DNA of 64,000 nt from Octopus sinensis (Eukaryota). The stretch covers positions 8,370,001-8,434,000 of the forward strand of contig NC_043023.1 of assembly GCF_006345805.1 (NCBI RefSeq). The letters run 5' to 3'. Below, piece by piece: positions 7,005 to 63,992 of this stretch (position 1 is its first letter; each line of letters begins with the position of its first letter). Below the pieces are notes generated by a model. That model was given only the letters and a program-made list of their open reading frames with translations, was not told the DNA's origin and searched no databases. The position numbers and the translations under genes are program-made.

Positions 7005-7076
7005 AGATCTATCCAATAATACAATCGTGAAAATTGAAAAAGGATCGTTTGCAAATCTTCCGAGCTTAAAAATTTT
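7005..7076 (+). CDS. LRR exon 1 (72 nt, phase 2-2) of spliced LRR/LRRCT/three-finger-domain gene
   Basis: tttcag|AGATCTATCC...AAAATTTT|gtaagt; translates DLSNNTIVKIEKGSFANLPSLKI(L), a typical 24-aa LRR; GACTAAT branch-like motif about 40 nt upstream. Confidence 0.9.
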
Positions 7077-7379
7077 GTAAGTTGAACCAGTCTTGTTCAT
7101 ACTATATTCCTGAGTATATATTTCCTCAAATTTAATATCTTTCTATCTTTCTTTCTTAACCTTCTTTTGCCCTTCTCTAACTCACATTATCTCTCTCTCT
7201 ATATATATGTATGTGAGTTGAGTGTGTTTGTGTGTGACGATGTGCGTTTAAATAGGTCTTTGTGTTCTACATCACTGTTTGGTATATTGTGAAAAGTGCG
7301 TATATAGTCATACGTATATTTATGTCTGAAATGTGTGGATAAATATATAGTCCTTTAATGTGTCGTCTTGGGCAGGAGA

Positions 7380-8990
7380 TATTAGACAATTCTGTGATGA
7401 TATCACGTTGTAATTTTTCCTCGATAAATGAGCAAAAGCTACATTTATCAAAGGAAGAACGACAGAAACATCCCGCAGAATGTCATAAAGCAATTAGAAC
7501 TAGCGGAGAGATACATGTACTTATCGGTATTTGAAGTGGACATGATAAAATATTCAGTGATGAGGGAAAGGATCAGAATAGAATATTATCTCAGGGTAAA
7601 AGCAATATTCAAGATAGAGCTGAATGCAAGAAACAGGATCGAAGTGATCAATATTTTGCTATACAAATCGTGATTTACAATTTCAATATCATTAACTGGT
7701 CAATTATTGAAATATGTAATCTTGACAGAAAAATACGAAAATTGTTGACAATGCATAGAATGCACCACACTAAGGCAGATGTAGAACGATTTTACCTGCC
7801 AAGAAAAGAGGGTGGCCGTAGCATTTACAATTAGAATTAACAATGGAGAGTGCCACAATTCACCGAAACACCTACCAAAACAACTCTAATGACTGGATAT
7901 TAAGAATTGTCTCAAAGCATGAAAACAAGAAAGTGTCATACAAAGTAACGAAGCATGCAAAGGAATATATAAACGAATTCCAAATACAACAAATCCCAGA
8001 GTTAGACGTACTAGAAACAAGCACAGAAAAATCTAAGCGAATGAAAGTACATGCAAAGAATCTGACTTAGATATTCTTACAGATAAATGTCAAAGAAAAC
8101 ATCTCAATGGCAAATACCCAAAGAGAGCTAATAGTACCGATGTGGAAAAAGCCATTACCCATCAATGGTTAGTGTTTTCTAGCTTAAAATCAGACACAGA
8201 CGGGTTTAATATAGCAGCTGAAGATCAAGGACTACCTACAAGAAACTACCATATTAAAGAACGGCAGTCACCCAGCATGTCTTGTATGTAAACAACAAAA
8301 TGAAACCATTGATCATGTTGTCTCCATGTGCAGTCTTCTTGTGCATACAGAATATCTCAACAGGCATTATTGAGCAGCACATCATATTCACTGGTTAATT
8401 TGCAAAAACATAGACGTGCCACATGATACAATCTGTTGGGGACACGAACACCCTCCAGTTCTTGAAGATGATCGCATCTTATCCTCTAGAACTTCGCCAC
8501 TCAAAGTGAAAGAAAGATAGATGCGAGTAGACGAGGCATTATATAGAAAAACTACAGGAAAAAACATGCCTCCTCATTTAAAACTGTCCCAATCGACATA
8601 AAAGTATCTGTCAAAACCTACAAAACTGAGCAAGTGTAAAGATCTTGAAATAGAAATTAGCAAAATGTGGAAGTAAAACAATGCCTGTTGTCATAGTTGC
8701 CCGAGGAATTATAGCAAAAGGCCTGAATCATACCTATCTCAGATACTAGGAAACCCCAAAATGGCAGCAACTCAAAAGATAGCGCTAATGGGAACCGCCC
8801 ATATCCTACGTAAAATACTGTGTATTTAATTTTAAGTTTTAAAACAAACTCATTTTCTTTGAACATCATTATGGTCATCTCCTTCAGGAAATCCCCAAAC
8901 ACCGCATTTTTTTCCTTATCTTCCTGCTTTTAATTCCGTCGATATATTAAAACTGTTATGGCTAGTCTCTTCTATTATTGAATGTGCTGA
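7380..8990 (+). mobile_element. Degenerate R4/Dong-clade retrotransposon 3' fragment (also at 14820-16790 and 22980-23680)
   Basis: Remnants RIEYYLRVKAIFKIELNARN, RKLLTMHRMHH, ERFYLPRKEGGR, AQDQ..TRNY, KYKDLEIEISKMW, similar to the element at 51103-55013. Confidence 0.85.
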
Positions 8991-8999
8991 TATGATTTC

Positions 9000-11000
9000 T
9001 CGCGTCACACCGCATTCTTATGAGCCGCCACCACAAAAACCTATTTCCATTTGAAGAAAAGACTGATGCAATGAATACCTTATATATAGGTCCTCTAGGC
9101 TGAAGCTTTGATACCATAAAATGATCCACGAATGAGATGTGTATCACCGAATCAAAACAAAGCAATTCTCTCACAATACACTACATGCATCTCCCAGAGG
9201 CAGATATAAATAAACTATACGTCCCACGTGAGGATGTAAGAGTGCGCAGAAGCTTCTGCCACTCTTGTAAAATAAGAGTAACCATAAGGTTAGATGACAA
9301 ACAAAAGAAAAGCAAAGACTCTCTATTAGTATGAAAGTAGTAAGACATACACACCTTTCTTTTTCAGTAAATTACTAAATCTTTCTTGCCACTTGCACAG
9401 TGAGGTGTTGTGGTGCTACCCAAATCAGGGTTTTGATCACATACATGTGAAGCCAAGAAATTCTCCACCGCGCTCCAATTCCGTGATGCATTACCCTCGT
9501 ACTGAAAGCCTCGCTAACGCAACATCTAATCACAGAGAACCAAGATTTCTCTGAGGCTGCTTATGAAGTGCTTCAAATTGTATTTTCCACTCAGGACTAC
9601 GTTGCTCAGCCTTTTTCACAGGAAATCGCTTCCTTCTCTTCAAGGAGGATATTGAAATGTCATGTTCGGAGAACTGCCAAATGATCCATGGCGGATGCTC
9701 TATATTTAACTCCAGGTCTTAAAATTACCGGGAGACATCACATGTCCACTGTAGATAGTCGCCTTTCAGAATCCTTGTTGCTTTCACAATTAGATTATGT
9801 GTCACTCCGGTTAAATTTAAACACCTTCCCCAGGTTTTTCACTGTCTTCTAGATGATGGATAATAAGGAATACCTGCTTTTAAGGCCAACTTTGTTGACT
9901 GACGAAGCTGAAACTCATGTGACTCCCTGTCATAAACTATTCAATTAATTTTAGGATCGTCCATGCCATTATGGCAGATGTTGTAAAGAAAGTTAGGTCA
10001 AGACTACGACTACAAGTACTCAATCTTCCTCGGTATGACTCAGCTTACAGGTGCAGTTTAGTATTCCCCCACTTTTCACTACATTCACTTGGGTGGTGTG
10101 GATTTCTCTCTCACCCCACCCTCACCGTCATTTTAAATGGAATTTTAAGGCTTCGATGAGAGTTTGATCGTATTATATCTCTCTCTTCAACCGTTCTGTA
10201 TTCTCCACCACACTACCTCTCAGCTTATAGCCTGTTCGCCAGGTCTTCTTAGTTCCAGTTCATTTGAATGGTTCCAACAAGCAAAATTTGTTGTGGGTTA
10301 CTGCGATCCAGCCTCTGGAAACACGACCGAATCCGGCTTCCTTCAGTGCAGGCGCCAACAGTTGGCATTTGATTAACACAAAATTAGGATTTCATTGGAA
10401 ACGCATTTGTTACTCATTCTGTCTGTGATGTACTGTGCAAGCAGGAACCTGTTGTGCTTAGATGATTTTGATATGGAATCTTCGGCATTTATCCTAATTA
10501 CGGGTCTCAAATTATTATCAAATACATTTTGTTCGAGTTGTTTCTCAACATTGCCGTGACCCCCACCTTTTATCAGGGCTAAGAATCATCTTGCTCTTCT
10601 TCCCTTTGCTGTAGACACCTGCCATTGCACTCACTGCTATTTATGGCAAATAATTTTAAACTGCGTAAGGCTGATCCTCAAGCCATGGCGACATCTAACC
10701 CGGCATCTCGAATACCGCAACAATTTTCCACCATTTGTAGAACTGCGTCGTTTCATTCGGGTGTTGCCGCAAGCCGTCTACGTAGACGGTTAAGAGCTTC
10801 ATAGTCAATGAACCACTAGCCTCCACAAAGTGATGCACGTAGTGTTCCCTAAAGGCCGCAAATATCTGCTTAGAATCGAAGAGAACGCATCTCACCTGAT
10901 TCATCAACACCAAATTATTTTCCGATGCCACGTTGCACCTACTCTTATTCACCCATATGTCGGACATTGTCATTAAAGCATGCAAAAATGAAAACAATCC
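9000..11000 (-). mobile_element. Highly degenerate non-LTR retroelement remnant, possibly REL/HERO-like (copy at about 16800-18850)
   Basis: Fragmentary RT-like translation (VKNLGKVF; a weak NAYGSIPH-like stretch); many stops. Confidence 0.3.
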
Positions 11001-11778
11001 TAGTGTTTACCGTTGGAGAAGCGGACAAGAGCCAATCTCGTCGGTGGCAGCGGCACTTGCAGTGTATTGGGTAGCCCCTTTATTCCCTCTAGAGTGTGTT
11101 TCTGTGTAGAAATATATATAAATTTATATGTATATAATTCATATTTGTGTGTGTGTGTATCTGTGTTCCTGAGCTTAAATCTTTTTCCCTACCCCTTCAT
11201 TTACTTATATATAAATTCACATATATAAAGGTGTTGATATAAATTCCAGGAAGCATGAGGGAAGGTGTTGTTTACACTGGTTCAGTTCACATCTAACTGT
11301 TGCAGACAGAAATTTAGTAGTAGTAAGGAATATAGGGAGGTAAGGCAAAGTAAAGGACATTATGGGGGAATAAGGGTGCCATAGACAAAGATTAGTTTGT
11401 TTCTGTGGTGATAGAAAATCTAGGTCCTGGAATTTATATCAACACCTTTATGGTTGGATTTAACTTTTCTGAGAATTTAATAATCATTTCAAGAATTTAA
11501 AAAAAAAACTGTGCATTGTTGGAAGACATATAAAGACTTCTTATTACCTTACTTCAAAGTCATAGAACTCACTCTGAATGCTTCATAAGGATATTTACAT
11601 TCTCTAGGATGGTTGGAAAACATATATGTGATTTAGCTGATGAATACTTGACATTATATTTGCTGTAATATTTGCAGCTTTAAATAAAAGTGTTCTCAGT
11701 ATGAAAACATTGTACCGAATTACTGATCCATTGTTGTTACTTTTTTCTTGGCTATATATATATATATATAAATATATA

Positions 11779-11826
<48 letters not shown>

Positions 11827-11831
11827 ATATA

Positions 11832-12415
11832 CAACTTATAAACAAGGGCAAAAGAAAGAGAATTCAATGCCAAATATGCCGAAATAGACTTAATCGTCAA
11901 TAACCATATAATTTATCACTATAAACACGCGTCTCGAAAGCAAGCTGATAGAAATTTCTAAAACAATTTCGTTATTATCGGATCGATCCCCATTTCTGAG
12001 TTAATTCATTTAGAATTTTCTCGTCATCAGCGATAAATACGATAAGAAAATAAATGAGATACTTACTTGTACCTATGGAAGAAGTAAACACTAAGTCATG
12101 AGCACACTTAAGTACTCCAAATATATCCAAAATAGAAACTCCGCAGCATACCTCGAGACACGTGTGAACGGACTGAAAATTCTCTTAGAGAATTCTCTTA
12201 TCGTATTTATCGCTGATGACGAGAAAATTCTAAATAAATTAACTCAGAATTGGGGATCGATCCGATAATAACGAAATTTGTTTTCGAAAATTCTATCGGC
12301 TTGCTTTCGAGACGTGAGCTTATAGTGATAAATTATATGGTTATTGACGATTAAGTCTATTTCGGCATATTTGGTATTGGATTATTTTTCTATTGTTCTT
12401 GTTTATAAGTTGCTT
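11832..12415. mobile_element. Foldback element with about 220-bp inverted arms (copy 19716-20295; left arm only at 170-370; diverged relative 48460-48725)
   Basis: 11832-12050 is the reverse complement of 12192-12415; the arm carries a CTGATGA...GAAA hammerhead-like motif. Confidence 0.8.
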
Positions 12416-13885
12416 GTAAATTTAACCTTTAAAGGCATTTTTTAACGTGCTGGCCATTGATAACATTTTTTCGAATATTTTATCCTATATTAGATGTAAA
12501 TTTAATACTATTCACTTCCGGACTCTCTCACTCTATGAGAACTTTCAGTCCGATCACACCTGTCTCGAGGTATGCTGTGGAAGTTAGTGTTTAGTCCTCC
12601 TATATATTGACTGATTGCACTATTGTGGTCATTAAGGTTTTACTTTCATATCATACTACGAAAGACGGTTAGAGATTATATTATATTTTTGTATGATTTT
12701 AAAAGATTTCACGCTCTTTAGTACGTATTTAGGAGTTGTAATTTCTAATTGAAATGTATTTATTGATACGGTTATACATAGGGTAAAGGTGGTTGAAATT
12801 TGTGGGTTTCTTTGATTTCTTTGTTCCTAAACAACACTTATTTAGTGCTGTTACACCGCCGGATTGAGGGTAGGACCAGGTGTCGAAACCATAATGGTAA
12901 CAGTGGCGTCGTGAGGTATGTTGGATTGTTGCTATGGTTGGTGGAATGTTATAGAAACAGATCCTTTTAATATATAGATGTGTGTGGGTTGTGTGGTTGT
13001 GTGTGGTGTGTGTCGTGTGTTGTTGCGTGTGTGTGTCGGTCGATGAAATTTACGGGAAATAAAAGTCGAAAAAGGTGGTGTAGATTCAACGTCGGGACTT
13101 GAGAAAGAGAACTTCTTTTACTTTCGAGCCTAGCTCCTCAACAGAAAGAGAAAGGCGAACATGAACAAAACGGGGACTTCTTAAAATCTTGTCGATTTGG
13201 GATCAAGCATGGCAACTGGTTAGGAAAAACATAGCTTGACGGGAGAGATAGAGAGTCGGGGAGATAATAAACAACTGGAGATCCCAAAGCAATGGTGTGC
13301 GTACGGATGTGTATGTAAGAATGTGTATAAGTGTGTGTGTGTGTATGTGTGTGTTGATAGGGGCTAATGACTATGATGTGTGGATGTATGCGTGCGTAGA
13401 TGTGTGCGTTTGTAGGGTGTGGGTGTGCGGATGATTGTGTATGGGTGTGTAGATGATGTTTTTTTGTCTGGGTATTGGAAAGTGGTTAGTGCTAGTGCTA
13501 GCACAAGCACAGACACACAAATATAGACAGATTTATGTATATATATTTGTGTTCCCTCAAGATCACCTAACAACCAATGTTGGTGTTATACACCCTGTAA
13601 CTTAGTGGTCCGGCAAAAGATACCGAGAGAATGAGTGCTAGTCTTTCAACAAATAAATGCTGGGCTCGATTGGTTCGAATAAAGGCTCTAGCATGGCCAT
13701 TGTCAAATTACTGAAAAAAGTACATGTATAAACGTGTTACATACACACACACACAAACACACACACACACACACAGAGATATATGTACACACACACACAA
13801 ATATATACTTATACATATTTGTATAGATAGATAGATAGATAGATAGATACACAGATAGATAGATGGATGGATAAATAAATGGATG

Positions 13886-13948
<63 letters not shown>

Positions 13949-13968
13949 GGATAGGTAAACAGACAGAC

Positions 13969-14040
<72 letters not shown>

Positions 14041-14427
14041 GGATGGATAACTTGATACATGTCTCCAGTTCTAGTTTAGTTTTCTTTACCCTTTTTATCT
14101 CATTTATCAATAACTGCTCGTCGTTAATTCTATTCCTATTCTCATCCTTCTCTTTTGTTATAGTTTCAACTTTGTATATCAGTGTCATCCTCCTCCTCAT
14201 CATCATTCCAAATATTAAGAGCACCATCAGTAAATATTGTCATCATAATCATCGTCTGCGTCCTCGTAGTGGTTGTCACCATCATCGTCATCATGATCAT
14301 CATCTTCACCATCATCATCATCCTTACAGTCATAATCTTAAACCAACACTGCAATGCCAGCAGACCGAACAACTTCATCACTACCAAATCCAGCCACCGT
14401 CAATTTTCTTCATTAATTATCTTTCAG

Positions 14428-14499
14428 AGTTCTATCCAATAATGCAATCGAGAAAATTGAAAGCGGATCATTTGAAAATCTTCCGAATTTAAAATTTTT
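14428..14499 (+). CDS. LRR exon 2 (72 nt, phase 2-2)
   Basis: tttcag|AGTTCTATCC...AAATTTTT|gtaagt; VLSNNAIEKIESGSFENLPNLKF(L). Confidence 0.85.
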
Positions 14500-17400
14500 G
14501 TAAGTTGAACCAGTCTTGTTCATACTATATTCCTGAGTATATATTTCCTCAAATTTAATATCTTTCTATCTTTCTTTCTTAACCTTCTTTTGCCCTTCTC
14601 TAACTCACAATCTCTCTCTCTATATATATATATGTATGTGAGTGTGTGTGAGTTGAGCATGTTTGTGTGTGACGATGTATGTTTACATAAGTCTTTGTGT
14701 TCTACATCACTGTTTGGTATATTGTGAAATGGGCGTATATAGTCATATGTATAGTTAAGCCTGAAATATGTGGATAAATATATAGTCCGTCAATGTTTCG
14801 TCTTGGGCAGGAGATATTAAACAATTCTGTGATGATATCACGTTGTAATTTTACCTCGATAAATGAGCAAAAGCTACATTTATCAAAGGAAAAACGACAG
14901 GAACATCCCGCAGAGTGTCATAAAGGAATTAGAACCAGCGGAGAGATACATATATTTATCGGTAATTGAAGTGGAAATGATCAAATATTTAGTGATGAGG
15001 GAAAGGATCAGAATAGAATATTATCGCAGGGTAAAAGAAATATTCAAAGCAGAGCTGAATACAAGAAACAGGATCGAAGTGATCTGTACTTTTGCTATAC
15101 CAGGCGTAATATGTAATCTTGACAGAAAAATACGAAAATTTTTGACAATGCGTAGAATACATCACCCTAAAGCAGATGTAGAACGATTTTACCTGCCAAG
15201 AAAAGAAGGTGGCCGTAACATTTACAATTTGAATTAACAATGGAGAGTGCCACAATTCACCGAAACACCTACCTAAACAACTCTCATGACTGGATGTTAA
15301 GACTTGTCTCAAAGCACGAAAACAAGAAAGTGTCATACAAAATAACAAAACATGCAAAGGAATATCTAAGTGAATTCCAAATACAACAAATCCCAGAATT
15401 AGACGTACTAGAAGCAAGCACAGAAAAAGCTAAGCGAATGAAAGTATATTTAAAGAATCTGACTTAGATATTCTTACAGATAAATGACAAAGAAACATCT
15501 CAATGGCAAATACCCAAAGAGAGCTAATAGTACCGATGTTGGCAAAGCCTGGTGACATCTGCCACGTGAATATAGACATCGATACATGAATTTTGTGAGA
15601 TGCTATCAGCCTTTTCCAAAGCTTCACAACTTCACTCAAGACATGAAACGAGACGTCCAGTGAGACGTTGAATCTCTTAACCGTGCAAGGCTAACCATTG
15701 TAGACGTGTGTTCGTCTTATAGTTTTTTTTATGAGCCAGTTGAACAAAATAGTGTGGTTTTACAGTTTGCTGGAAATAACAGCCAAACCTCTCTCATACC
15801 ACGGCCTTAATAGTTTTAAGGAAAGGGAAAAATAGACGTACTAGAAACAAGCACGGAAAAAGCTAAGCGAATGAAAGTACATGCAAAGAATTTGACTTAG
15901 ATATTCTTGCAGATAAATGTCAAAGAAAACATCTCAATGGCAAATACCCAAAGAGAGCTAATGGTACCGATGTGGAAAAAGCCATTACCCATCAATGGTT
16001 AGTGTTTTCTAGCTTAAAATCAGACACAGACGGATTTAATATAGCAGCTCAAGATCAAGTTCTACCTACAAGAAACTACCATATTAAAGAACGGCAGTCA
16101 CCCAGCATGTCTTGTATGTAAATAACAAAAGGAAACCATTGATGATGTTGTCTCCATGTGCAGTCTTCTTGTGCATACAGAATATCTCAACAGGCATGAT
16201 TGAGCAGCACATCATATTCAGTGGTTAATTTGCAAAAACATAGACGTGCCACATGATACAATCTGTTGGGGACACGAACACCCTCCAGTTCTTGCAGATG
16301 ATCGCATCTCATCCTCTAGAACTTCGCCACTCAAAGTGACAGAAAGATAGATGCGAGTAGACGAGGCATTATATAGAAAAACTACAGGAAAAAAGCATGC
16401 CTCCTCATTTAAAACTGTCCCAATCGACATAAAAGTATCTGTCAAAACCTACAAAACTGAGCAAGTGTAAAGATCTTGAAAGAGAAATTAGCAAAATGTG
16501 GAACAAAAACAATGCCTGTTGTCATAGTTGCCCGAGGAATTATAGCAAAAGGCCTGAATCATACCTATCTCAGATACTAGGAAACCCCAAAATGGCAGCA
16601 ACTCAAAAGATAGCGCTAATGGGAACCGCCCATATCCTACGTAAAATACTGTGTATTTAATTTTAAGTTTTAAAACAAACTCATATTCTTTGAACATCAT
16701 TATGGTCATCTCCTTCAGGAAATCCCCAAACACCGCATTTTTTTCCTTATCTTCTTGCATTTAATTCCGTCGATATATTAAAACTGTTATGGCTAGTCTC
16801 TTCTATTATTGAATGTGCTGATATGATTTCTCGCGTCACACCGCATTCTTATGAGCCGCCACCACAAAAACCTATTTCCATTTGAAGAAAAGACTGATGC
16901 AATGAATACCTTATATATAGGTCCTCTAGGCTGAAGCTTTGATACCATAAAATGATCCACGAATGAGATGTGTATCACCGAATAAAAACAAAGCAATTCT
17001 CTCACAATACACTACATGCATCTCCCAGAGGCAGATATAAATAAACTATACGTCCCACGTGAGGATGTAAGAGTGCGCAGAAGCTTCTGCCACTCTTGTA
17101 AAATAAGAGTAACCATAAGGTTAGATGACAAACAAAAGAAAAGCAAAGACTCTCTATTAGTATGAAAGTAGTAAGTCATACACACCTTTCTTTTTCAGTA
17201 ACTTCCTAAACCTGTCTTGCCACTTGTCACAGTGAGGTGGTGTGGTGCTACCCAAATCAGGGTTTTCATCACATACATGTGAAGCCAAGAAATTCTCCAC
17301 CGCGCTCCAATTCCGTGATGCATTACCCTCGTACCGAAAGCCTGTCTAACGCAACATCTAATCACAGAGAACCAAGATTTCCCTGAGGCTGCTTATGAAG

Positions 17401-19603
17401 TGCTTCAAATTGTATTTTCCACTCAGGACTACGTTGCTCAGCCTTTTTCACAGGAAATCGCTTCCTTCTCTTCAATGAGGATATTGAAATGTCATGTTCG
17501 GAGAACTGCCAAATGATCCATGGCGGATGCTCTATTTTTAACTCCAGGTCTTAAAATTACCGGGAGACATCACATGTCCACTGTAGATAGTCGCTTTCAG
17601 AATCCTTGTTGCTTTCACAATAAGATTATGTGTCACTCCGGTTAAATTTAAACACCTTCCCCAGGTTTTTCACTGTCTTCTAGATGATGGATAGTAAGTG
17701 ACCGCTACTGACTGAGGAATACCTGCTTCTGAGGCCAACTTTGTTGATTGACGAAGCTGAAACTCTTGTGACTCCCAGTCATAAACTACTCAAGTCACTT
17801 TAGGATCGTCCATGCCATTATGGCAGATGTTGTAAAGAAAGTTAGGTCAAGACTACGACTACAAGTACTCAATCTTCCTCGGTATGACTCAGCTTACAGT
17901 TGCAGTTTAGTATTCCCCCACTTTTCACTACATTTACTTGGGTGGTGTAGAGTTCTCTCTCACTCCACCCTCACCGTCATTTTAAATGGAATTTTAAGGC
18001 TTCGATGAGAGTTTGATCGTATTATCTCTCTCTCTTCAACCGTTCTGTATTCTCCACCACACTACCTCTCTGCTTATAGCCTGTTCGCCAGCTCTCCTTA
18101 GTTCCAGTTCATTTGAATGGTTCCAACAAGCAAAATTTGTTGTAGGTTACTGCGATCCAGCCTCTGGAAACACGACCGAATCCGGCTTCCTTCAGTGCAG
18201 GCGCCAACAGTTGGCATTTGATTAACACAAAATTAGGATTTCATTGGAAACGCATTTGTTACTCATTCTGTCTGTGATGTACTGTGCAAGCAGGAACCTG
18301 TTGTGCTTAGATGATTTTGATATGGAATCTTCGGCATTTAGCCTAATTACGGGTCTCAAATTATTATCAAATACATTTTGTTAAAGTTCTTTCTCAACAT
18401 TGCCGTGACCCCCACCTTTTATCAGGGCTAAGAACCATCTCGTTCTTCTTCCCTTTGTTGTAGACACCTGCCATTGCACTCACTGCTATTTATGGCAAAT
18501 ACTTTTACACTGCGTAAGGCTGATCCTCAAGCCATGGCGACATCTAATCCGGCATCTCGAATACCGCAACAATTTTCCACCATTTGTAGAACGGCGTAGT
18601 TTCATTCGAGTGTTGCCGCAAGCCGTCTACGTAGACGGTTAAGAGCTTCATAGTCAATGGACCACTAGCCTCCACAAACTGATGCACGTAGTGTTTCCTA
18701 AAGGCCGCAAATATCTGCTTAGAATCGAAGAGAACGCATCTCACCTGATTCATCAACACCAAATTATTTTCCGATGCCACGTTGCACCTACTCTTATTCA
18801 CCCATATGTCGGACATTGTCATTAAAGCATGCAAAAATGAAAACAATCCTAGTGTTTACCGTTGGAGAAGCGGACAAGAGCCAATCTCGTCGGTGGCAGC
18901 GGCACTTGCAGTGTATTGGGTAGTCCCTTTATTCCCTCTAGAGTGTGTTTCTGTGTAGAAATATATAAAATTTATATGTATATAATTCATATTTGTGTTT
19001 GTGTGTGTATCTGTGTTCCTGAGCTTAAATCTTTTTCCCTACCTCTTCATTTACTTATATATAAATTCACATATATAAAGGTGTTGATATAAATTCCAGG
19101 AAGCATGAGGGAAGGTGTTGTTTACACTGGTTCAGTTCACATCTAACTGTTGCAGATAGAAATTTAGTAGTAGTAAGGAATATAGGGAGGTAAGGCAAAG
19201 TAAAGGACATTATGGGGGAATAAGGGTGCCATAGACAAAGATTAGTTTGTTTCTGTGGTGATAGAAAATCTAGGTCCTGGAAGTTATATCAACACCTTTA
19301 TGGTTGGATTTAACTTTTCTGAGAATTTAATAATCATTTCAAGAATTTAAAAAAAAAACTGTGCATTGTTGGAAGACATATAAAGACTTCTTATTACCTT
19401 ACTTCAAAGTCATAGAACTCACTCTGAATGCTTCATAAGGATATTTACATTCTCTAGGATGGTTGGAAAACATATATGTGATTTAGCTGATGAATACTTG
19501 ACATTATATTTGCTGTAATATTTGCAGCTTTAAATAAAAGTGTTCTCAGTATGAAAACATTTGTACCGAATTACTGATCCATTTATGTTACTCTTCTCTT
19601 GGC

Positions 19604-19711
<108 letters not shown>

Positions 19712-19714
19712 ATA

Positions 19715-21209
19715 TACAACTTATAAACAAGGGCAAAAGAAAGAGAATTCAATGCCAAATATGCCGAAATAGACTTAATCGTCAATAACCATATAATTTA
19801 TCACTATAAACACGCGTCTCGAAAGCAAGCTGATAGAAATTTCTAAAATATTTCGTTATTATCGGATCGATCCCCATTTCTGAGTTAATTCATTTAGAAT
19901 TTTCTCGTCATCAGCGATAAATACGATAAGAAAATAAATGAGATACTTACTTGTACCTATGGAAGAAGTAAACACTAAGTCATGAACACACTTAAGTACC
20001 CCAAATATATCCAAAATAGAAACTCCGCAGCATACCTCGAGACACGTGTGAAGGGACTGAAAATTCTCTTAGAGAATTCTCTTATCGTATTTATCGCTGA
20101 TGACGAGAAAATTCTAAATAAATTAACTCAGAATTGGGGATCGATCCGATAATAACGAAAGTTGTTTTCGAAAATTCTATCGGCTTGCTTTCGAGACGTG
20201 AGCTTATAGTGATAAATTATATGATCATTGACGATTAAGTCTATTTCGGCATATTTGGTATTGGATTATTTTTCTATTGTTCTTGTTTATAAGTTGTTTG
20301 TAAATTTAACCTTTAAAGGCACTTCTTTAACGTGCTGGCCATTGATAACATTTTTTCGAATATTTTATCCTATATTAGATGTAAATTTAATACTATTCAC
20401 TTCCGGACTCTCTCACTCTATGAGAACTTTCAGTCCGATCACACCTGTCTCGAGGTATGCTGTGGAAGTTAGTGTTTAGTCCTCCTATATATTGACTGAT
20501 TGCACTATTGTGGTCATTAAGGTTTTACTTTCATATCATACTACGGAAGACGGTAGAGATTATAATTTTTGTATGATTTAAAAGATTTCACGCTATTTAG
20601 TTACGTATTTAGGAGTTGTAATTTACTAATTGAATTTATTTATTGATACGGTTATACATAGGGTAAATGTGGTTGAAATTTGTGGTTTCTTTGATTTCTT
20701 TGTTCCTAAACAACACTTATTTTAGTGCTGTTCACACCGCCGGATTGAAGGGTAGTGACCAGGTGTCGAAACCATAATGGTAACAGTGGCGTAGGTATGT
20801 TGGATTGTTGCTATGGTTGTGGAATAGTATTATAACACAGATCCTTTTAATATATAGATGTGTGTGTGGGTGTGTGTGTGTGTGTGTTTGCGTGTTTGTG
20901 TGTCGGTAGATTAAGTTTACGGGAAAATAAAAGTAAAAAACTGGAGTTAGATTCAACGCTCGGGAAATTGAGAAATTCTTTTACTTTCGAACCTATGCTC
21001 CTCAACAGAAAGGAAAAGGAGAACATGAACAAAAAGGGATTAAAAATCTTGTCTATTTAGGGATCAAGCATGGCAACTGGTTAGGAAAAACATAGCTTGA
21101 CGGGAGAGATAGAGAGTCGGGGATATAATAAACAACTGGAGATCCCAAAACAGTGGTGTGCGTACGGATGTGTATGTAAGAATGTGTAAGTGTGTGTGTG
21201 TGTGTGTGT

Positions 21210-21245
<36 letters not shown>

Positions 21246-21436
21246 GATAGGGGCTAATGACTATGATGTGTGGATGTATGCGTGCGTAGCTGTGTGCGTA
21301 GGTATGTTGTGTGCAAAAGACACCGAGAGAATGAGTGCTAGTCTTTCAACAAATACATGCTGGGCTCGATTGGTTCGAATAAAGGCTCTAGCATGGCCAT
21401 TGTCAAATTACTGAAAAAAGTACATGTATAAACGTG

Positions 21437-21506
<70 letters not shown>

Positions 21507-21714
21507 CACACACACACACACAAATATATACTTATACACATTGATATATGTGTGTATGTGTTTACCTATCTGTCTGGCGATTGATAGATACATTGATAAA
21601 CTGATAGACAGATAGATAGATGGATGGATAGATAGATAGATAGATAGATGGATAGATAGATAGATAGATGGATGGATAGATAGATAGATGGATGGATAGA
21701 TAGATAGATGGATG

Positions 21715-21749
<35 letters not shown>

Positions 21750-21770
21750 GGATAGATAGATAGATAGATG

Positions 21771-21817
<47 letters not shown>

Positions 21818-21835
21818 GGATAGATAGATGGATGC

Positions 21836-21880
<45 letters not shown>

Positions 21881-21918
21881 CTGATGGATAGATAGATAGA
21901 TAGATGGATAGATAGATG

Positions 21919-21981
<63 letters not shown>

Positions 21982-23850
21982 GGATAGATAGATAGACAGA
22001 TAGATAGATACATGTCTCCAGTTCTAGTTTAGTCTTCTTTACCCTTTTTATCTCATTTATCAATAACTGCTCTTCGTTAATTTTATTCCTATTCTCATCC
22101 TTCTCTTTTGTTATAGTTTCAACTTTGTATATCAGCGTCATTCTCCTCCTCATCATCATTCCAAATATTAAGAGCACCATCAGTAAATATTGTCATCATA
22201 ATCATCGTCTGCGTCCTCATAGTGGTCGTCACCCTCATCGTCATTATGATCATCGTCATCATCACTATCAACATCATCCTTATCAGTCATAATCTTAAAC
22301 CACACATGCAATGCCAGCAGACCGAAACAACTTCATCACTACCAAATCCGTCACCGTCAATGCCTACATCATAATAATTATCGCTTTCATCATCACTTAA
22401 CACAATGCCATACATCTTCATTATTATCTTCATAATCTTCACTTATCATTTTTACAATCGTCTTCACCAAATTGTCTCACTTCTACTTATTTTCTTTCTA
22501 TTTCAGCAGCTAATTCATTGGACATAATATTTGAAATATATGACTAATCACTTCTATATTATCTTTTGTAAATTATCTTTCAGACGTCTAGCCAATAATG
22601 CAATCGTGAAAATTGAAAATGGATCGTTTGCAAATCTTCCGAATTTAAAAATTTTGTAAGTTGAACCAGTCTTGTTCATACTATATTCCTGAGTATATAT
22701 TTCCTCAAATTTAATATCTTTCTATCTTTCTTTCTTAACCTTCTTTTTCCCTTCCCTAACTCACATTATCTCTCTCTCTATATTTATGTATGTGAGTTGA
22801 GCGTGTTTGTGTGTGACGATGTGTGCTTACATAAGTCTTTGTGTTCTACATCACTGTTTGGTATATTGTGAAATGGGCGTATATAGTCATATGTATAGTT
22901 AAGCCTGAAATATGTGGATAAATATATAGTCCTTCAATGTTTCGTCTTGAGCAGGAGATATTAAACAATTCTGTGATGATATCGCGTTGTAATTTTACCT
23001 CGATAAATGAGCAAAAGCTACATTTATCAAAGGAAAAACGACAGGAACATCCCGCAGAGTTTCATAAAGGTATTAGAACCAGCGGAGAGATACATGTACA
23101 TATCGCTGTTTGAAGTGGATATGATAAAATATTCAGTGATGAGGGAAAGGATCAGAATAGAATATTATCGCAGGGTAAAAGCAATATTCAAGATAGAGCT
23201 GAATGCAAGAAACAGGATCGAAGTGATCTGTACTTTTGCTATACCAGGCGTAATATGTAATCTTGACAGAAAAATACGAAAATTGTTGACAATGCGTAGA
23301 ATTCATCACCCTAAAGCAGATGTAGAACGATTTTACCTGCCAAGAAAAGAAGGTGGCCGTAACATTTACAATTTGAATTAACAATGGAGAGTGCCACAAT
23401 TCACCGAAACACCTACCAAAACAACTCTCATTACTGGATGTTAAGACTTGTCTCAAAGCACGAAAACAAGAAAGTGTCACATAAAATAACAAAACATGCA
23501 AAGGAATATCTAAGTGAATTCCAAAAACAACAAATCCCAGAGTTAAACGTACTTGAAGCAAGCACAGAAAAAGCTAAGCGAATGAAAGTACATGCAAAGA
23601 ATCTGACTTAGATATTCTTACAGATAAATGACAAAGAAAACATCTCAATGGCAAATACCCAAAGAGAGCTAATGTACCGATGTTGGCAAAGCCTGGTGAC
23701 ATCTGCCACGTGAATATAGACATCGATACATGAATTTTGTGAGATGCTATCAGCCTTTTCCAAAGTTTCACAACTTCACTCAAGACACGAAACGAGACGT
23801 CCAGTGAGACGGTGAATCCCTTCAGCGTGCAAGGACCACCATTCTCGACG
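19715..23850. repeat. Tandem segmental cassette A, copy 3 (head portion, one LRR exon)
   Basis: Homologous to 11830-15700. Confidence 0.9.
22584..22655 (+). CDS. LRR exon 3 (72 nt, phase 2-2)
   Basis: tttcag|ACGTCTAGCC...AAAATTTT|gtaagt; RLANNAIVKIENGSFANLPNLKI(L). Confidence 0.9.
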
Positions 23851-45342: not shown

Positions 45343-45450
45343 GTAAGTTTGATCTTCCTGATATTATTAATCTAATTGTATATTTCTACATATAATGTCT
45401 TCCCTTCTATCTTCGCTCTCTCTTTCATCCTCTCTATCAGACTTTCACTT

Positions 45451-45488
<38 letters not shown>

Positions 45489-46237: not shown

Positions 46238-46366
<129 letters not shown>

Positions 46367-46737
46367 CATATATATATATATACAAGGCCACCTCATCCCA
46401 TGGACGGTGCTGAGGTGTCAAAAATTAAAACCAAAGGGTTTCAAAAAACTTGTCCGACCGTCCCATAGTTCTCCCCTTTGAGAAACACTGATTTAACCCA
46501 AATTTCAGACACCAGCAAAAGAAGAAATAAAGATAGACTTTTTTCTATTCCAAGAAAAACGATTCTTGCAAATGCACGTTCCCACGGCTTTATCGATCGC
46601 ATACACACCTGAAATCGATTTTTGTAATTTTTTCAAAACTTATGCATGCCCTGATAGCAGAAAATAGAAATAAACAGTTTTTGACTGATATTTCTAATTT
46701 TTCGGTATGTGGCTAAGCAACCTGTTGCCTGCCCCTT

Positions 46738-46819
<82 letters not shown>

Positions 46820-47199
46820 CAATATTAAATCTGTGAGTGAGACGTAAACAGTAGTAGCACGGAATCGTACTTCTATAATTTCATTGTTGTCAAAAGCATC
46901 ATGGCCATGAACGCGACCATGAACGTGCTCAACACCACACGCCTTATCATCTCATCATCATCATCATAAACGACATCATTATTAGCATCATCGTCACCAT
47001 CAGTAAACTTCGTCACAACTCATGATTATCAATATCATTCTAACCTTCACTCCTCATTATCTTCATTTTCATCAAATTTTTGCACATCTACTTCCTTTTC
47101 TTCTACATCTACATCCAGTTGATTAGACATATGCGTATTTAAAATTGTGTGACTAATCATTTTTATACCATTTCTCACCAATTCTCTTCCAACTTACAG

Positions 47200-47271
47200 A
47201 AATCTAGCCAATAATAAAATCGCGATTATTGAACATGGATCGTTCGACGGTCTCACCAATGTAGAAAAGTT
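47200..47271 (+). CDS. LRR exon 6 (72 nt, phase 2-2)
   Basis: ttacag|AAATCTAGCC...AAAAGTT|gtaagt; NLANNKIAIIEHGSFDGLTNVEK(L). Confidence 0.9.
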
Positions 47272-47390
47272 GTAAGTTTGATCTTCCTGATATTATTAAT
47301 CTAATTGTATGTTTCTACATATAATGTCTTCCCTTCTATCTTCGCTCTCTCTTTCATCCTCTCTAACAGATGTTCACTTTGTCTATGTGT

Positions 47391-47431
<41 letters not shown>

Positions 47432-48401
47432 CATGCGCGGGTATGAAAATGATTAAGGATATGAATGTTTGTGGTTTACGTTTGTGATGTGATTTATATA
47501 AATTTATGTGAACAACGTAACAATTAACAATTAAAGACAAAATTCCCCAATACGGGGAAAACCCATGTAGGACGACCAAGGGAATCCAGAGATTCAGATC
47601 TAACAATATTCCACAATTAGGCACCAGTAATAAGAAGTAGAATACACATCCAGGTGCATTCCTCCTGTATGATAAGTAAATTGAAATATCCTATGGCAGA
47701 ATTCGGAAAAATTCAACATTTTGACAACAAACGATAAATATAGAGACAGTTGCGTTTATTAGATTTCGCAGTATAAAGCCTACAATTGTTTCTAGAATAT
47801 TCACATAGATAACACCTTCAGTATACAGATGTAGCGGGATCAACACTTAAGGTTGGTAACATAGATGCAAACATAAATATACAATGCTTATATACACATA
47901 CACATATCTATACATAAATAAAAAATATGACGAATCTGAATTGTAAACTGAATTTCGTTGCACTCAATAACATTTTTGTAATTGCAGACAGAGAGGCAGA
48001 TTTACAGATGCAGACTCACGCACACACACACACACGCACACACACATACACACACAAACACGAGCACACATACTCAACCACAAAACAATTTGTAGTCATA
48101 CACATGCTCACATACTTATATATGTAAATATACATGTGTTACAAACATATATATATATTATATATACACACGCAAATATATATACACGTGTTCACAGACA
48201 TATAAAGAAACATGAATATATATATAGACAATAATATATTATTATTTTTATAATTTGTATTCTTATCTTATATGTATTGAATTATAAGATATATATGTAT
48301 GCTATTAAGGTTCTCATTTTGTTAAATGAATATATAATCCAACATTCTAATATATGAAAGTTGATTAACAAACTAAATTTGTTTCTCAATTTTCTTATTT
48401 G

Positions 48402-49720: not shown

Positions 49721-49789
49721 AAATTTGAGCTACAACCGTTTACAAAAATTTGATGGCGCTTTCTCGTACCTTTCCAGCATATATGAGAT
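49721..49789 (+). CDS. LRR exon 7 (69 nt, phase 2-2)
   Basis: ctttcag|AAATTTGAGC...ATGAGAT|gtatgt; NLSYNRLQKFDGAFSYLSSIYE(I), a 23-aa LRR. Confidence 0.85.
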
Positions 49790-55853: not shown

Positions 55854-56020
55854 TGACCTCAGAAACAATACAGACATGATGTGTGGATGTCAACTTCCAG
55901 CTATGTCAAATTATATAAAGAGTACATACAAGAGAACTGTGACAATTCTGGGCAAGTGTCACACAAATTTAGGCTCTAAAGATAAATTAATATCTATAAT
56001 GGAATATTCACAATGTAAAG
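55854..56020 (+). CDS. Last LRR plus LRR C-terminal cap (LRRCT) exon (167 nt, phase 2-1)
   Basis: attacag|TGACCTCAGA...TGTAAAG|gttagt; DLRNNTDMMCGCQLPAMSNYIKSTYKRTVTILGKCHTNLGSKDKLISIMEYSQCK; the CxC...C...C pattern follows xLxxN; the phase joins exon 7 to the next exon. Confidence 0.85.
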
Positions 56021-57564: not shown

Positions 57565-57643
<79 letters not shown>

Positions 57644-57836: not shown

Positions 57837-57890
<54 letters not shown>

Positions 57891-58691: not shown

Positions 58692-58800
<109 letters not shown>

Positions 58801-59251: not shown

Positions 59252-59343
59252 GAAAGACGTTATTTCAAAAGAATTTACAGTGTCAAACATGTTCAGGGAT
59301 GACTTGCGATTATTTAGAAATGAGAAGTTGTCCAGGACTACTG
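59252..59343 (+). CDS. Three-finger (Ly6/uPAR-like) domain, N-terminal exon (92 nt, phase 1-0)
   Basis: tctgtag|GAAAGACG...GGACTACTG|gtaaaa; (G)KTLFQKNLQCQTCSGMTCDYLEMRSCPGLL; LxCxxC start typical of LU domains. Confidence 0.8.
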
Positions 59344-63000: not shown

Positions 63001-63548
63001 TACTCCGTGCCTATAAAATATACACGTAGAATAGAAACATATATATCCGGTATCAATTTATACATGTCTTTGCTTTTGCATTGCAAGGCTTGAGGAGCCT
63101 ATTAAGACTACCGCTTTCTGTGACGTGTGCCGCTGTCTTTTTTCTGTTATTCATGAGGTTTGCATGCGTGGTTTTTCGTGTGTTTTCTGCACAAAATTTA
63201 AAGTCCATTCCGCTATTCAGCTATGGCTAAAGAATACTGCTTGTATCAGAGTAATTTGTAATATTTTGTGCTTTATTATGGGTGACAGAGCGGTGTGGTA
63301 TTGATATGTACCGTACTTCATTGGACGTATCATAACGGTGGATAGTGCAAACATTTATAACGCATCATGTATAAGTGGAATATGTCAATATATTATACAG
63401 GGGATGATTGAAACTAATCTCCCAACAGCTTTGTTTCAGTTTCATTTGTTGTCTTGAATAATTTTTGAAGTAAAGATTTGACTTTTACATGCTAAAAATC
63501 CTGCGTTGCTATTGTCGACGTTCGTTTGGTAGTATTATATGGCTGTTA

Positions 63549-63775
63549 AGGCAGCGAGCTGGCAGAATCGTTAGCAAGCCGGGCGAAATGCTTTGCGGTA
63601 TTTCGTCCGCCGCTGCGTTCTGAGTTCAAATTCCGCCGACTTTGCCTTTCATCCTTTCGGGGGTCGATTAAATAAGTACCAGTTAAGCACTGGGGTCGAT
63701 ATAATCGACATAATCCGTTTTTCTGTCCTTGTTTGTCCTCTCTGTGTTTAGCCCCTTGAGGGTAATAAAGAAATA
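63549..63775 (+). mobile_element. SINE (same family) with perfect 18-bp target-site duplication
   Basis: AGTATTATATGGCTGTTA at 63531-63548 and 63776-63793. Confidence 0.92.
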
Positions 63776-63808
63776 AGTATTATATGGCTGTTATCTTCAT
63801 TGTTACAG

Positions 63809-63992
63809 CCTCTCTGCCAATATGGGCTATCAGTGGATGGCAGTACATTGAAGTTTCAAAGATCCTGCAGCACATACAACAACTGCCTTGAAGCTTTCAG
63901 AAACAATTCCCTTACATGCAAAAATTGGTCCAATGGCACTGCTTGTGTTGCTTGTTGCAGAGACAACTTATGCAATAAGAATGATTTCCCTG
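63809..63992 (+). CDS. Three-finger (Ly6/uPAR-like) domain, C-terminal exon (184 nt, phase 0-1)
   Basis: ttacag|CCTCTCTGC...TTCCCTG|gtaagt; PLCQYGLSVDGSTLKFQRSCSTYNNCLEAFRNNSLTCKNWSNGTACVACCRDNLCNKNDFP; ends in the CCxxxxCN LU signature. Confidence 0.88.

What the first reader, a model, noticed from the sequence alone, without database searches (positions are those of the whole stretch)
7005..63992. Hidden spliced gene with unusual LRR(n)-LRRCT-three-finger (Ly6/uPAR) architecture
Seen: ten exons with canonical ag/gt boundaries join in frame with compatible phases (2-2 x7, 2-1, 1-0, 0-1). The product is ...DLSNNTIVKIEKGSFANLPSLKIL VLSNN...IYEI DLRNNTDMMCGCQL...SQCK GKTLFQKNLQCQTC...CCRDNLCNKNDFP. 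None of the LRR exons appear in the ORF track. Established: 72-nt phase-2 single-LRR exons are typical of extracellular LRR receptors (LGR/RXFP, Slit-like), and CCxxxxCN ends LU domains. Inference: this is an extracellular recognition protein fusing an LRR solenoid directly to a 12-Cys three-finger domain, a combination I do not recognise from characterised proteins.
Basis: partly seen in the sequence, partly recalled or inferred. Interest (0 to 1): 0.85.

Follow-up and report, generated by a model that had tools for sequence, protein, structure and literature searches.

The report
Octopus adhesion-GPCR ectodomain: LRR plus Ly6 domain
The ten small exons are real and encode the outer tip (leucine-rich repeats, cap and a Ly6/uPAR three-finger domain) of an octopus adhesion G-protein-coupled receptor; the family is already annotated across molluscs and already published as an octopus-specific expansion, so this is a correct reading of an ordinary, little-studied gene.

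Summary
Ten + strand exons with ag/gt boundaries and compatible phases join into a 314-codon open frame: seven LRRs, an LRRCT cap and a 12-Cys domain.

The Cys-rich domain is a genuine LU (three-finger) domain. A family profile hits human LYPD1 at E=6e-7, and an AlphaFold model (pLDDT 78) matches only three-finger structures.

The LRRCT-to-LU junction is supported. The orthologous O. sinensis model uses the same exons, more than 20 paralogous models join the two domains, and a 4.2-kb transcript contig carries both in one ORF.

This is not a free-standing LRR–LU protein and the architecture is not unrecognised. Homologues continue SEA-like – HormR – GAIN/GPS – 7TM, so they are adhesion GPCRs. 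Such models are annotated in octopods, gastropods, bivalves and an annelid. The octopus members are "group 3" of Ritschard et al. 2019.

The window holds only the middle of the gene; both ends lie outside it.

One feature is worth noting: the LRR exons sit in recent tandem duplications, differ in number from O. sinensis, and diverge faster than their introns, almost entirely by amino-acid changes.

Verdict: a new member of a known kind, of moderate interest.

The parts
7005..7076 (+). LRR exon 1 (72 nt, phase 2-2): DLSNNTIVKIEKGSFANLPSLKIL
   Evidence: ag/gt boundaries and open frame. Orthologous exon in O. sinensis at L001 5362-5433.
14428..14499 (+). LRR exon 2 (72 nt), a tandem duplicate of exon 1
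   Evidence: Lies in a 7.4-8.2 kb tandem unit. No separate counterpart in L001.
22584..22655 (+). LRR exon 3 (72 nt), a tandem duplicate of exons 1 and 2
29051..29122 (+). LRR exon 4 (72 nt): RLYGNKISKIERGSFENLPRIWTL
   Evidence: No match in the O. sinensis contig.
45271..45342 (+). LRR exon 5 (72 nt)
   Evidence: Lies in a 1.9-kb tandem unit shared with exon 6.
47200..47271 (+). LRR exon 6 (72 nt)
   Evidence: L001 has four copies of this unit, two of them broken.
49721..49789 (+). LRR exon 7 (69 nt), the last repeat before the cap: NLSYNRLQKFDGAFSYLSSIYEI
   Evidence: Acceptor CAG at 49718-20 and donor gtatgt. Intact and 97.5% identical in L001 at 23718-23786, although model P0001 skips it. 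Homologous to the conserved last repeat of the paralogues.
55854..56020 (+). LRRCT cap exon (167 nt, phase 2-1), with the four Cys pattern CxC...C...C
   Evidence: The four Cys are at least 90% conserved in 23 relatives. Same exon as P0001 residues 73-128.
59252..59343 (+). LU domain exon a (92 nt, phase 1-0), Cys 1-4
63809..63992 (+). LU domain exon b (184 nt, phase 0-1), Cys 5-12, ending CCRDNLCN. The donor gt at 63993 shows the gene continues beyond the window.
   Evidence: 184/184 nt identical to L001. In L001 the next exon (start of the SEA-like domain) lies 3.3 kb downstream.
25727..25762 (+). Relic half-exon (GSFENVPRLRVL) with no acceptor; a partial duplicate of LRR exon 4 plus its downstream intron
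5773..23850 (+). Tandem array of 7.4-8.2 kb units (88-95% identical) carrying LRR exons 1-3. The tail of a further upstream unit lies at 106-1143.
   Evidence: Self-comparison.
44938..48300 (+). Two 1.9-kb tandem units (88% identical) carrying LRR exons 5 and 6

Best explanation
The ten exons are the middle of a large octopus gene for an adhesion G-protein-coupled receptor. It belongs to the lophotrochozoan LRR-LU-SEA-HormR-GAIN-7TM type, which in octopus is the 'group 3' expansion.

Shown here:
- The window encodes seven 23-24-residue LRRs, an LRRCT cap and, eight residues later, a 12-Cys Ly6/uPAR three-finger domain of the LYPD1/Lynx type, all in one reading frame.

Inferred from the ortholog and paralogues:
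- Upstream of the window lie a signal peptide, an LRRNT and at least one more LRR unit.
- Downstream lie a SEA-like domain, a hormone-receptor-like domain, a GAIN domain with the GPS cleavage motif (C-x-C-x-HL|T/S) and tethered-agonist sequence (T/S-x-F-A-L-L-M-D), a secretin-type 7TM, and a cytoplasmic tail.

Inferred from established adhesion-GPCR biology:
- The concave face of the LRR arc, together with the LU domain at its C-terminal end, binds a partner on another cell or in the matrix.
- Force or rearrangement transmitted through the SEA/HormR/GAIN stalk displaces the N-terminal fragment at the GPS. This exposes the tethered agonist, which activates the 7TM and G-protein signalling.

On how the gene evolves: each LRR is a symmetric phase-2 exon, so units can be duplicated, lost or skipped without breaking the frame. 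The window shows this happening, with recent tandem copies, copy-number differences from O. sinensis, and amino-acid-biased divergence.
For: Exon structure and frame:
- Splice sites, phases and open frame verified.
- LRR_8 E=3.5e-50; the best solved relatives are LRR ectodomains.

LU domain:
- All 12 Cys are conserved in 27 sequences, 26 from molluscs and one from an annelid.
- Profile against PDB sequences gives LYPD1 E=6e-7 and LYPD6 E=9e-6. All 23 hits at E<=10 are three-finger proteins.
- AF2 model has pLDDT 78 and pTM 0.69. The Foldseek top 50 are all three-finger folds, headed by Lynx2 and Lynx1 at probability 1.00.
- An independent SSF57302 hit exists in a published InterProScan table.

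One gene, not two:
- The window is colinear at 92-98% identity with O. sinensis contigs whose Gnomon model P0001 joins the same LRRCT, LU-a and LU-b exons and adds a SEA-like exon.
- More than 20 further octopus models join LRRCT to LU.

Adhesion GPCR:
- Full-length homologues P0067, P0070, P0071 and P0072 carry LRR, then a match to the LU-SEA-HormR profile, then GPS and 7tm_2.
- P0071 is an uninterrupted 1155-aa ORF on a 4.2-kb assembled read contig, so it is a transcript.
- The same layout occurs in Haliotis, Dreissena, Saccostrea, Ylistrum, Nucella, Plakobranchus, Argonauta and the annelid Paralvinella.
- The C-terminal half is most similar to ADGRG6 and ADGRG2, at E=1e-66 and 6e-65.

Group 3 membership:
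- The UniProt IDs of these O. bimaculoides proteins are listed as class B group 3 by Ritschard et al..

Functional constraint:
- LU-b is 184/184 identical to O. sinensis although dS is about 0.04.
Against: - The window ends 8 nt after the LU-b donor, and the orthologous contig ends 1.4 kb after the next exon. No SEA-2, HormR, GAIN or 7TM exon of this particular locus has been seen.
- Most octopus models of the family are fragments, so some loci may be truncated copies.
- No single-sequence Pfam hit exists for the LU or LRRCT parts.
- The SEA and HormR assignments are weak. SEA scores 5.5e-5 in one gastropod homologue. The best PDB profile hit is the SEA entry 1ivz at E=0.004, among noise. HRM scores range from 3.6e-5 to 0.4, below the curated cut-off.
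- dN/dS against O. sinensis is 0.78 over 170 codons, which is also compatible with relaxed constraint.
- There are no expression data for this locus.
Confidence: 0.78

Rival explanations
1. A free-standing secreted, GPI-anchored or single-pass LRR-LRRCT-LU(-SEA) protein with no 7TM. This is essentially the first reader's reading: a truncated paralogue, or a soluble or decoy isoform of the receptor family.
For: - Many annotated family members end after LU or the SEA-like domain, for example P0002, P0004, P0012, P0014 and P0018.
- Nothing downstream of the first SEA-like exon is visible for this locus or its ortholog.
- Tandem gene families often shed partial copies.
Against: - Those short models mostly end in read-through or at contig ends, and several start inside the LRRCT exon at an internal Met. 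They look like prediction fragments rather than evidence of short proteins.
- Every model that extends further continues into HormR, GAIN and 7TM.
- The LU-b exon ends in phase 1 at a strong donor, and the ortholog continues into the SEA-like domain.
- No hydrophobic GPI or TM tail follows the LU domain in any relative.
Confidence: 0.12
2. A non-functional, decaying duplicate (pseudogene or unexpressed exon array) inside a tandem cluster.
For: - dN/dS is 0.78 against O. sinensis. The LRRCT exon has 8 non-synonymous and 0 synonymous changes.
- There is a relic half-exon in the window, and there are broken LRR exon copies in L001.
- The structure differs greatly between the two genomes.
Against: - All ten exons keep an open frame, ag/gt sites, every Cys and the LRR consensus. 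The eight exons that have a counterpart in L001 (LRR1, 5, 6, 7, LRRCT, LU-a, LU-b) are intact there too.
- LU-b plus its flanks are 222/222 identical, where about 6 differences are expected at the local 2.7% intron divergence.
- The substitutions avoid structural positions, which fits diversifying selection. Ritschard et al. report positive selection for group 3.
Confidence: 0.08
3. Two separate genes: an LRR protein ending at the LRRCT exon, and an independent Ly6-like gene starting between 56021 and 59251.
For: - Stand-alone Ly6 genes typically have a signal-peptide exon followed by two LU exons after a phase-1 intron. The phases here (1-0, 0-1) would allow that (knowledge).
- One fragment model is named 'ly6/PLAUR domain-containing protein 1-like'.
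Against: - That fragment (P0014) itself begins inside the LRRCT exon.
- No model has its own signal peptide before LU.
- LRRCT and LU are contiguous in a transcript contig, in more than 20 models from several octopod species, and in gastropods, bivalves and an annelid.
- The 3.2-kb intron contains only SINE-like and tandem repeats.
Confidence: 0.02

Closest known systems
Octopus-specific 'group 3' adhesion GPCR expansion (Ritschard et al. 2019, PMC6408891)
   Same: The full-length O. bimaculoides homologues of the window peptide (UniProt A0A0L8FLR8, A0A0L8HDZ7, A0A0L8GYR2) are listed there as class B group 3. That paper reports LRRs in some members, one Death domain (seen here in P0067), tandem location, positive selection, and expression in axial nerve cord, suckers and skin.
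   Different: The paper's text does not mention the LU or SEA-like domains. Only one SSF57302 line appears in its supplementary table. The window gene is from another octopus genome and is not itself in that set. The exon-level LRR duplication was not described.
Vertebrate ADGRA2/ADGRA3 (GPR124/GPR125)
   Same: Adhesion GPCRs whose ectodomain starts with LRRs and an LRRCT and continues through HormR and GAIN to the 7TM. Many octopus members carry a precomputed PF26588 'ADGRA2/3 GAIN' hit, and one is named 'adhesion GPCR A3'.
   Different: ADGRA has an Ig domain between LRRCT and HormR. Here that position is filled by LU plus a SEA-like domain, and no Ig hit was found. The 7TM/GAIN half is most similar to ADGRG6 and ADGRG2 among solved receptors.
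ADGRG6 (GPR126)
   Same: A SEA-HormR-GAIN-7TM core, which is the known ADGRG6 layout. It is the best sequence match for the GAIN/7TM half, at E=1e-66. NCBI names most members 'G6-like'.
   Different: ADGRG6 starts with CUB and pentraxin domains. This family starts with LRRNT-LRR-LRRCT-LU.
LYPD1 (Lynx2), Lynx1 and LYPD6: single-domain Ly6/uPAR proteins
   Same: The same 12-Cys pattern aligns over the whole domain (E=6e-7), and these are the best structural matches.
   Different: Those are small GPI-anchored or secreted single-domain proteins. Here the LU domain is an internal module of a multidomain receptor, with no signal peptide or GPI signal of its own.
LGR/RXFP receptors and Slit-type LRR proteins
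   Same: Extracellular LRR arcs built from one-repeat, phase-2 72-nt exons. LGR4 and LGR5 are among the best solved LRR matches.
   Different: LGR/RXFP have a rhodopsin-type 7TM and a hinge, with no GAIN/GPS and no LU. Relatives of this gene have 7tm_2 and GPS.

Membership tests
Extracellular 'typical' leucine-rich repeat proteins | Tandem 23-24-residue LxxLxLxxNxI repeats scoring above the Pfam LRR_8 cut-off | tested here: met
   LRR_8 E=3.5e-50, 168 bits against a cut-off of 27, in four stretches. PDB matches are LRR ectodomains at E down to 1e-48.
Extracellular 'typical' leucine-rich repeat proteins | C-terminal cap (LRRCT) with four Cys, CxC...C...C | tested here: met
   MMCGC...GKC...SQC follows the last repeat. 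The four Cys are at least 90% conserved in 23 relatives. The phmmer alignment to LRRC4B runs through the cap, query residues 90-241. Caveat: the Pfam LRRCT model gave no hit.
Ly6/uPAR (LU, three-finger) domain | Cys framework with N-terminal L-x-C-x-x-C and C-terminal C-C-x-x-x-x-C-N | tested here: met
   LQCQTC...CCRDNLCN. There are 12 Cys, 9 invariant and 3 at least 90% conserved, across 27 sequences (26 molluscan, one annelid).
Ly6/uPAR (LU, three-finger) domain | Significant sequence similarity to bona fide LU domains | tested here: met
   Family profile against PDB: LYPD1 E=6e-7, LYPD6 E=9e-6 and 1e-5, then SLURP-1, CD59 and TGF-beta/activin receptor ectodomains. No non-three-finger hit at E<=10. 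Single-sequence Pfam gave no hit.
Ly6/uPAR (LU, three-finger) domain | Three-finger beta fold | tested here: met
   This is a prediction only. The AF2 model has pLDDT 78.2. The Foldseek top 50 are all three-finger folds; Lynx2 has TM 0.61-0.65 and probability 1.00, although E-values are only about 0.02.
Ly6/uPAR (LU, three-finger) domain | Disulfide connectivity (four or five conserved bridges) | not testable with these tools
   Needs protein chemistry or an experimental structure.
Adhesion GPCR (class B2) | GAIN domain with a GPS motif directly before a secretin-type 7TM, in the same polypeptide as the adhesive N-terminal domains | not testable with these tools
   For this locus the sequence lies outside the window and outside the orthologous contig. 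The feature is met in homologues: P0067, P0070, P0071, P0072, P0082, P0084, P0085, P0088, P0089 and P0094 carry LRR, a match to the LU-SEA(-HormR) profile, GPS and 7tm_2. P0071 is a transcript.
ADGRA subfamily (GPR124/125) | Ig domain between LRRCT and HormR | tested here: not met
   No Ig-family Pfam hit in any member scanned. The interval is LU plus a SEA-like domain.
ADGRG6 (GPR126) | N-terminal CUB and pentraxin domains | tested here: not met
   The N-termini of full-length homologues are SP-LRRNT-LRR.
ADGRG6 (GPR126) | SEA-HormR-GAIN-7TM core | tested here: inconclusive
   GPS and 7tm_2 are clear, and ADGRG6 is the best match. SEA is supported only weakly: Pfam 5.5e-5 in Haliotis, and a profile top hit on the SEA structure 1ivz at E=0.004 among noise. 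HRM is below the cut-off.
Octopus 'group 3' aGPCR expansion | Clusters with the O. bimaculoides sequences assigned to group 3 | tested here: met
   The profile seeded with the window's LU hits P0067 (1.9e-97), P0070 (1.6e-69) and P0072 (4.9e-51). The UniProt members of two of those clusters, and a cluster-mate of the third, are labelled 'B 3' in the paper's tables. No phylogeny was built.
   Relatives carry 7tm_2 and GPS, never 7tm_1.

The most novel reading that the evidence does not exclude
The LRR exons of this receptor family may be a fast-evolving recognition cassette. Symmetric phase-2 exons are tandemly duplicated together with their introns. They differ in number between close octopus genomes, and diverge 1.4-2.8 times faster than their flanks, almost only by amino-acid changes. 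They could also be skipped combinatorially without breaking the frame. Together this would give octopus neurons, suckers or skin a diversified set of LU-bearing adhesion GPCRs, a surface-recognition code alongside the expanded protocadherins. The Lynx-like LU module might in addition engage nicotinic-type receptors, including the octopus chemotactile receptors, as Lynx/LYPD proteins do in vertebrates.
Probability: 0.12. Interest if true: 0.75.

Novelty: new member of a known kind. Interest (0 to 1): 0.38.

Why it matters
The result places an unannotated stretch of octopus genome in a defined receptor family. It corrects the impression that an LRR–three-finger fusion is an orphan architecture. 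The fusion is the conserved N-terminus of a lophotrochozoan adhesion-GPCR lineage that expanded in octopods.

Two points may be useful to specialists. First, the Ly6/uPAR domain and the SEA-like spacer of these receptors are not discussed in the papers I could search. They redefine the family's ectodomain as LRR-LRRCT-LU-SEA-HormR-GAIN. Second, the locus shows exon-level tandem duplication with amino-acid-biased divergence. This gives a concrete mechanism for the positive selection reported for this expansion, and a tractable target for tests of ligand-binding diversification.

Tried and rejected
- Single-sequence Pfam on the LU and LRRCT parts, and on short paralogues, gave no relevant hit. 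A family profile was needed.
- The first AlphaFold run (LRRCT+LU, 23 octopus-only sequences) gave pLDDT 52.7 and was not used for fold search. A second run on LU alone, with mollusc-wide sequences, gave pLDDT 78.
- The SEA-like profile against PDB gave a SEA structure as top hit, but interleukin-2 and ZnT8 scored similarly. SEA is therefore reported only as 'SEA-like'.
- A search of the window for a signal-peptide or LRRNT exon found none.
- A search of the window and the O. sinensis contigs for SEA-2 and HormR exons found none.
- None of the 63 proteins retrieved by then (P0001-P0063) is encoded by the window itself. Only P0001 is close, at 86-98% per exon.
- Literature searches for LU, Ly6 or three-finger domains in adhesion GPCRs found nothing relevant. 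One search failed on syntax.
- A tRNA scan of the window found nothing.
- dN/dS over 170 codons (0.78) and Fisher tests on exon versus flank divergence (p=0.009-0.34) are suggestive only.
- The reading as two genes, and the LGR/RXFP analogy, were considered and rejected (see rivals and membership test).

Full report
**Observation**

A mechanical scan for AG-72nt-GT segments with an LRR motif recovered six exons. Reading the boundaries gave ten exons with ag acceptors and gt donors. The exons join in one frame with no stop over 314 codons.

One correction is needed. The seventh LRR exon starts after the CAG at 49718-49720, so it is 49721-49789 (69 nt). This keeps phase 2-2. The last exon ends at 63992 in phase 1 before gtaagt, so the gene runs off the window. 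The joined peptide scores LRR_8 at E=3.5e-50. Its best solved relatives are LRR ectodomains: the IGF-binding-protein acid-labile subunit (IGFALS), TLR13, LRIG1 and LGR4/5.

**Source and ortholog**

A protein search with the LRRCT+LU segment found only octopus proteins. The best was P0001, 'leucine-rich repeat-containing protein egg-6-like, partial' from O. sinensis. It lies on two 44-45 kb contigs that are colinear with the window at 92-98% nucleotide identity. Its exons map one-to-one onto the window's LRR1, LRR5/6, LRRCT, LU-a and LU-b exons. It adds one more exon 3.3 kb downstream (GWTHSFELHLIF...) before the contig ends.

**The Cys-rich domain is a Ly6/uPAR domain**

- Pfam on single sequences was silent.
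- An alignment of 27 family LU segments (26 from molluscs, one from an annelid) shows all 12 Cys conserved.
- A profile of that alignment against all PDB sequences hits human LYPD1 at E=6e-7 over the whole domain, with every Cys aligned. It also hits LYPD6 at about 1e-5.
- All 23 hits at E<=10 are three-finger proteins: SLURP-1, CD59, TGF-beta/activin receptor ectodomains and snake three-finger proteins (the octopus-only profile behaved the same way).
- An AlphaFold model of the window's LU with this alignment reached pLDDT 78 and pTM 0.69.
- The 50 best Foldseek matches in the PDB are all three-finger folds, led by Lynx2/LYPD1 and Lynx1 at probability 1.00.
- Independently, the InterProScan table of Ritschard et al. 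lists a SUPERFAMILY 'snake toxin-like' hit at the same position of an O. bimaculoides paralogue.

**What the gene is**

Searching with longer paralogues and with an LU+SEA-like+HormR profile against 1.8 billion representatives showed that the LRR-LRRCT-LU block is the N-terminus of adhesion GPCRs.

- Partial octopus models overlap to give SP-LRRNT-LRR(n)-LRRCT-LU-SEA-like-HormR-like-GAIN-GPS-7TM.
- Single full-length proteins carry the whole series. Examples are O. bimaculoides P0067 (which also has a C-terminal Death domain), P0070 and P0072, and P0071.
- P0071 is an uninterrupted 1155-aa ORF on a 4.2-kb contig assembled from a sequencing run, so it is an mRNA.
- The same order occurs in Haliotis, Nucella, Plakobranchus, Dreissena, Saccostrea, Ylistrum, Mizuhopecten (fragment), Argonauta and the annelid Paralvinella.
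- The GPS reads C-x-C-x-HLT/S followed by F-A-L-L-M-D, the usual cleavage site and tethered agonist (read directly).
- The GAIN/7TM half is closest to ADGRG6 (E=1e-66) and ADGRG2 among solved receptors.
- The SEA assignment is weak: Pfam SEA at 5.5e-5 in Haliotis, and a profile top hit on the SEA structure 1ivz at E=0.004 among noise. HormR is also weak.

**Relation to the literature**

Ritschard et al. 2019 described an octopus-specific class B 'group 3' of about 21 adhesion GPCRs. These have LRRs in some members and one Death domain. They also show tandem location, positive selection, and expression in axial nerve cord, suckers and skin. The UniProt identifiers of the full-length homologues found here are labelled group 3 in that paper's tables. 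The paper's text does not mention Ly6, LU or SEA. Searches for such a combination in adhesion GPCRs found nothing.

**What the window adds**

- Self-comparison shows that LRR exons 1-3 lie in 7.4-8.2 kb tandem units (88-95% identical). The tail of a further unit lies at the window start, which implies at least one more LRR exon upstream. Exons 5-6 lie in 1.9-kb units.
- The O. sinensis contig has one copy of the first unit type and no LRR4. It has four copies of the LRR5/6 unit, two of them broken. It also has an intact LRR7 exon that its gene model skips.
- The window has a relic half-exon at 25727-25762.
- Between duplicated units the exons differ at 8-14% of positions, against 4.5-7% in 900 nt of flanking intron.
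- Of the 26 differing codons, 24 change the amino acid.
- Against O. sinensis, the LRRCT exon has 8 non-synonymous and 0 synonymous changes, while LU-b is 184/184 identical. Overall dN/dS is 0.78 with dS 0.04.

This fits diversifying selection on the LRR and cap surface with constraint on the LU core. The numbers are small, however, and relaxed constraint is not excluded.

**Mechanism**

What is shown is an LRR arc, a cap and an LU domain in one frame.

From homologues I infer that the rest of the receptor follows.

From established adhesion-GPCR biology I infer three steps:

1. The LRR concave face, with the adjoining LU domain, binds an external partner.
2. The SEA/HormR/GAIN stalk transmits the force.
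3. Release at the GPS exposes the tethered agonist and activates the 7TM.

Symmetric phase-2 single-repeat exons explain how repeat number changes without frame loss.

**Rivals**

- A truncated or soluble LRR-LU protein is possible (0.12), because nothing beyond the first SEA-like exon is visible for this locus.
- A decaying duplicate is less likely (0.08), given intact frames, splice sites and Cys, and a perfectly conserved LU-b.
- Two separate genes is very unlikely (0.02).

**Verdict**

The architecture is real but is a piece of an annotated, published adhesion-GPCR family. The finding is a new member of a known kind, of moderate interest because of the undiscussed LU/SEA modules and the exon-level diversification.

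Noticed in passing
window 1061-3448 (-), 41617-43620 (-), 51389-54647 (+): Non-LTR retrotransposon fragments inside the introns. Their ORFs hit RVT_1 (E about 1e-27 to 1e-31) and Exo_endo_phos. The first interrupts the upstream tandem unit.
   Followed up: partly
window 5582-5774, 6325-6448, 13823-14049, 21579-22010: Long (GATA)n/(ATAG)n microsatellites lie a few hundred bases upstream of LRR exons 1-3, one set per tandem unit. They create strong local GC/AT skew and long spurious minus-strand ORFs such as '[10 protein letters not shown]...'.
   Followed up: no
window 56139-56481 and 57881-58697: The LRRCT-LU intron holds two copies of a 174-bp SINE-like unit (93% identical) and 2.1 copies of a 398-bp unit (99% identical). 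ARAGORN calls no tRNA in the window.
   Followed up: partly
window 33280-33976 and 35906-36572: A pair of roughly 700-bp inverted repeats (94.6% identical) brackets a 2-kb segment of higher GC (0.45) that contains ORFs with no Pfam hit. It may be a foldback or DNA-transposon-like insertion in the 16-kb intron.
   Followed up: no
L001 23718-23786 (O. sinensis contig VCDQ01005335): The NCBI model P0001 skips an intact, 97.5%-identical ortholog of LRR exon 7 (cag...gtatgt, LNLSYNRLQKFDGAFSYLSSINEI). This is either a model error or exon skipping.
   Followed up: yes
L001 15165-21086 versus window 44938-48300; window about 10.6-39.3 kb: The two genomes differ in copy number. O. sinensis has four LRR5/6-type units, one with a 1-nt deletion and one with a lost donor, against two in the window. 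About 29 kb of the window, including LRR exons 2, 3 and 4, has no counterpart in L001. A 1.7-kb segment is inverted.
   Followed up: partly
window 55854-56020 versus L001 33272-33438: The LRRCT exon has 8 non-synonymous and 0 synonymous differences between the two genomes, all at non-Cys positions. The LU-b exon 8 kb away has no difference in 184 nt.
   Followed up: partly
P0067 (O. bimaculoides XP_014788728.1) residues 1203-1277: One full-length family member ends in a Death domain (Pfam E=3.3e-6) after a long STSQQ-repeat tail. That is an unusual cytoplasmic module for an adhesion GPCR. Ritschard et al. also noted it.
   Followed up: no
P0007, P0011, P0005, P0047, P0050, P0064 (octopus paralogues): Some models contain two LU domains or two SEA-like domains in series. 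This could reflect fused neighbouring tandem genes or real internal duplication.
   Followed up: no
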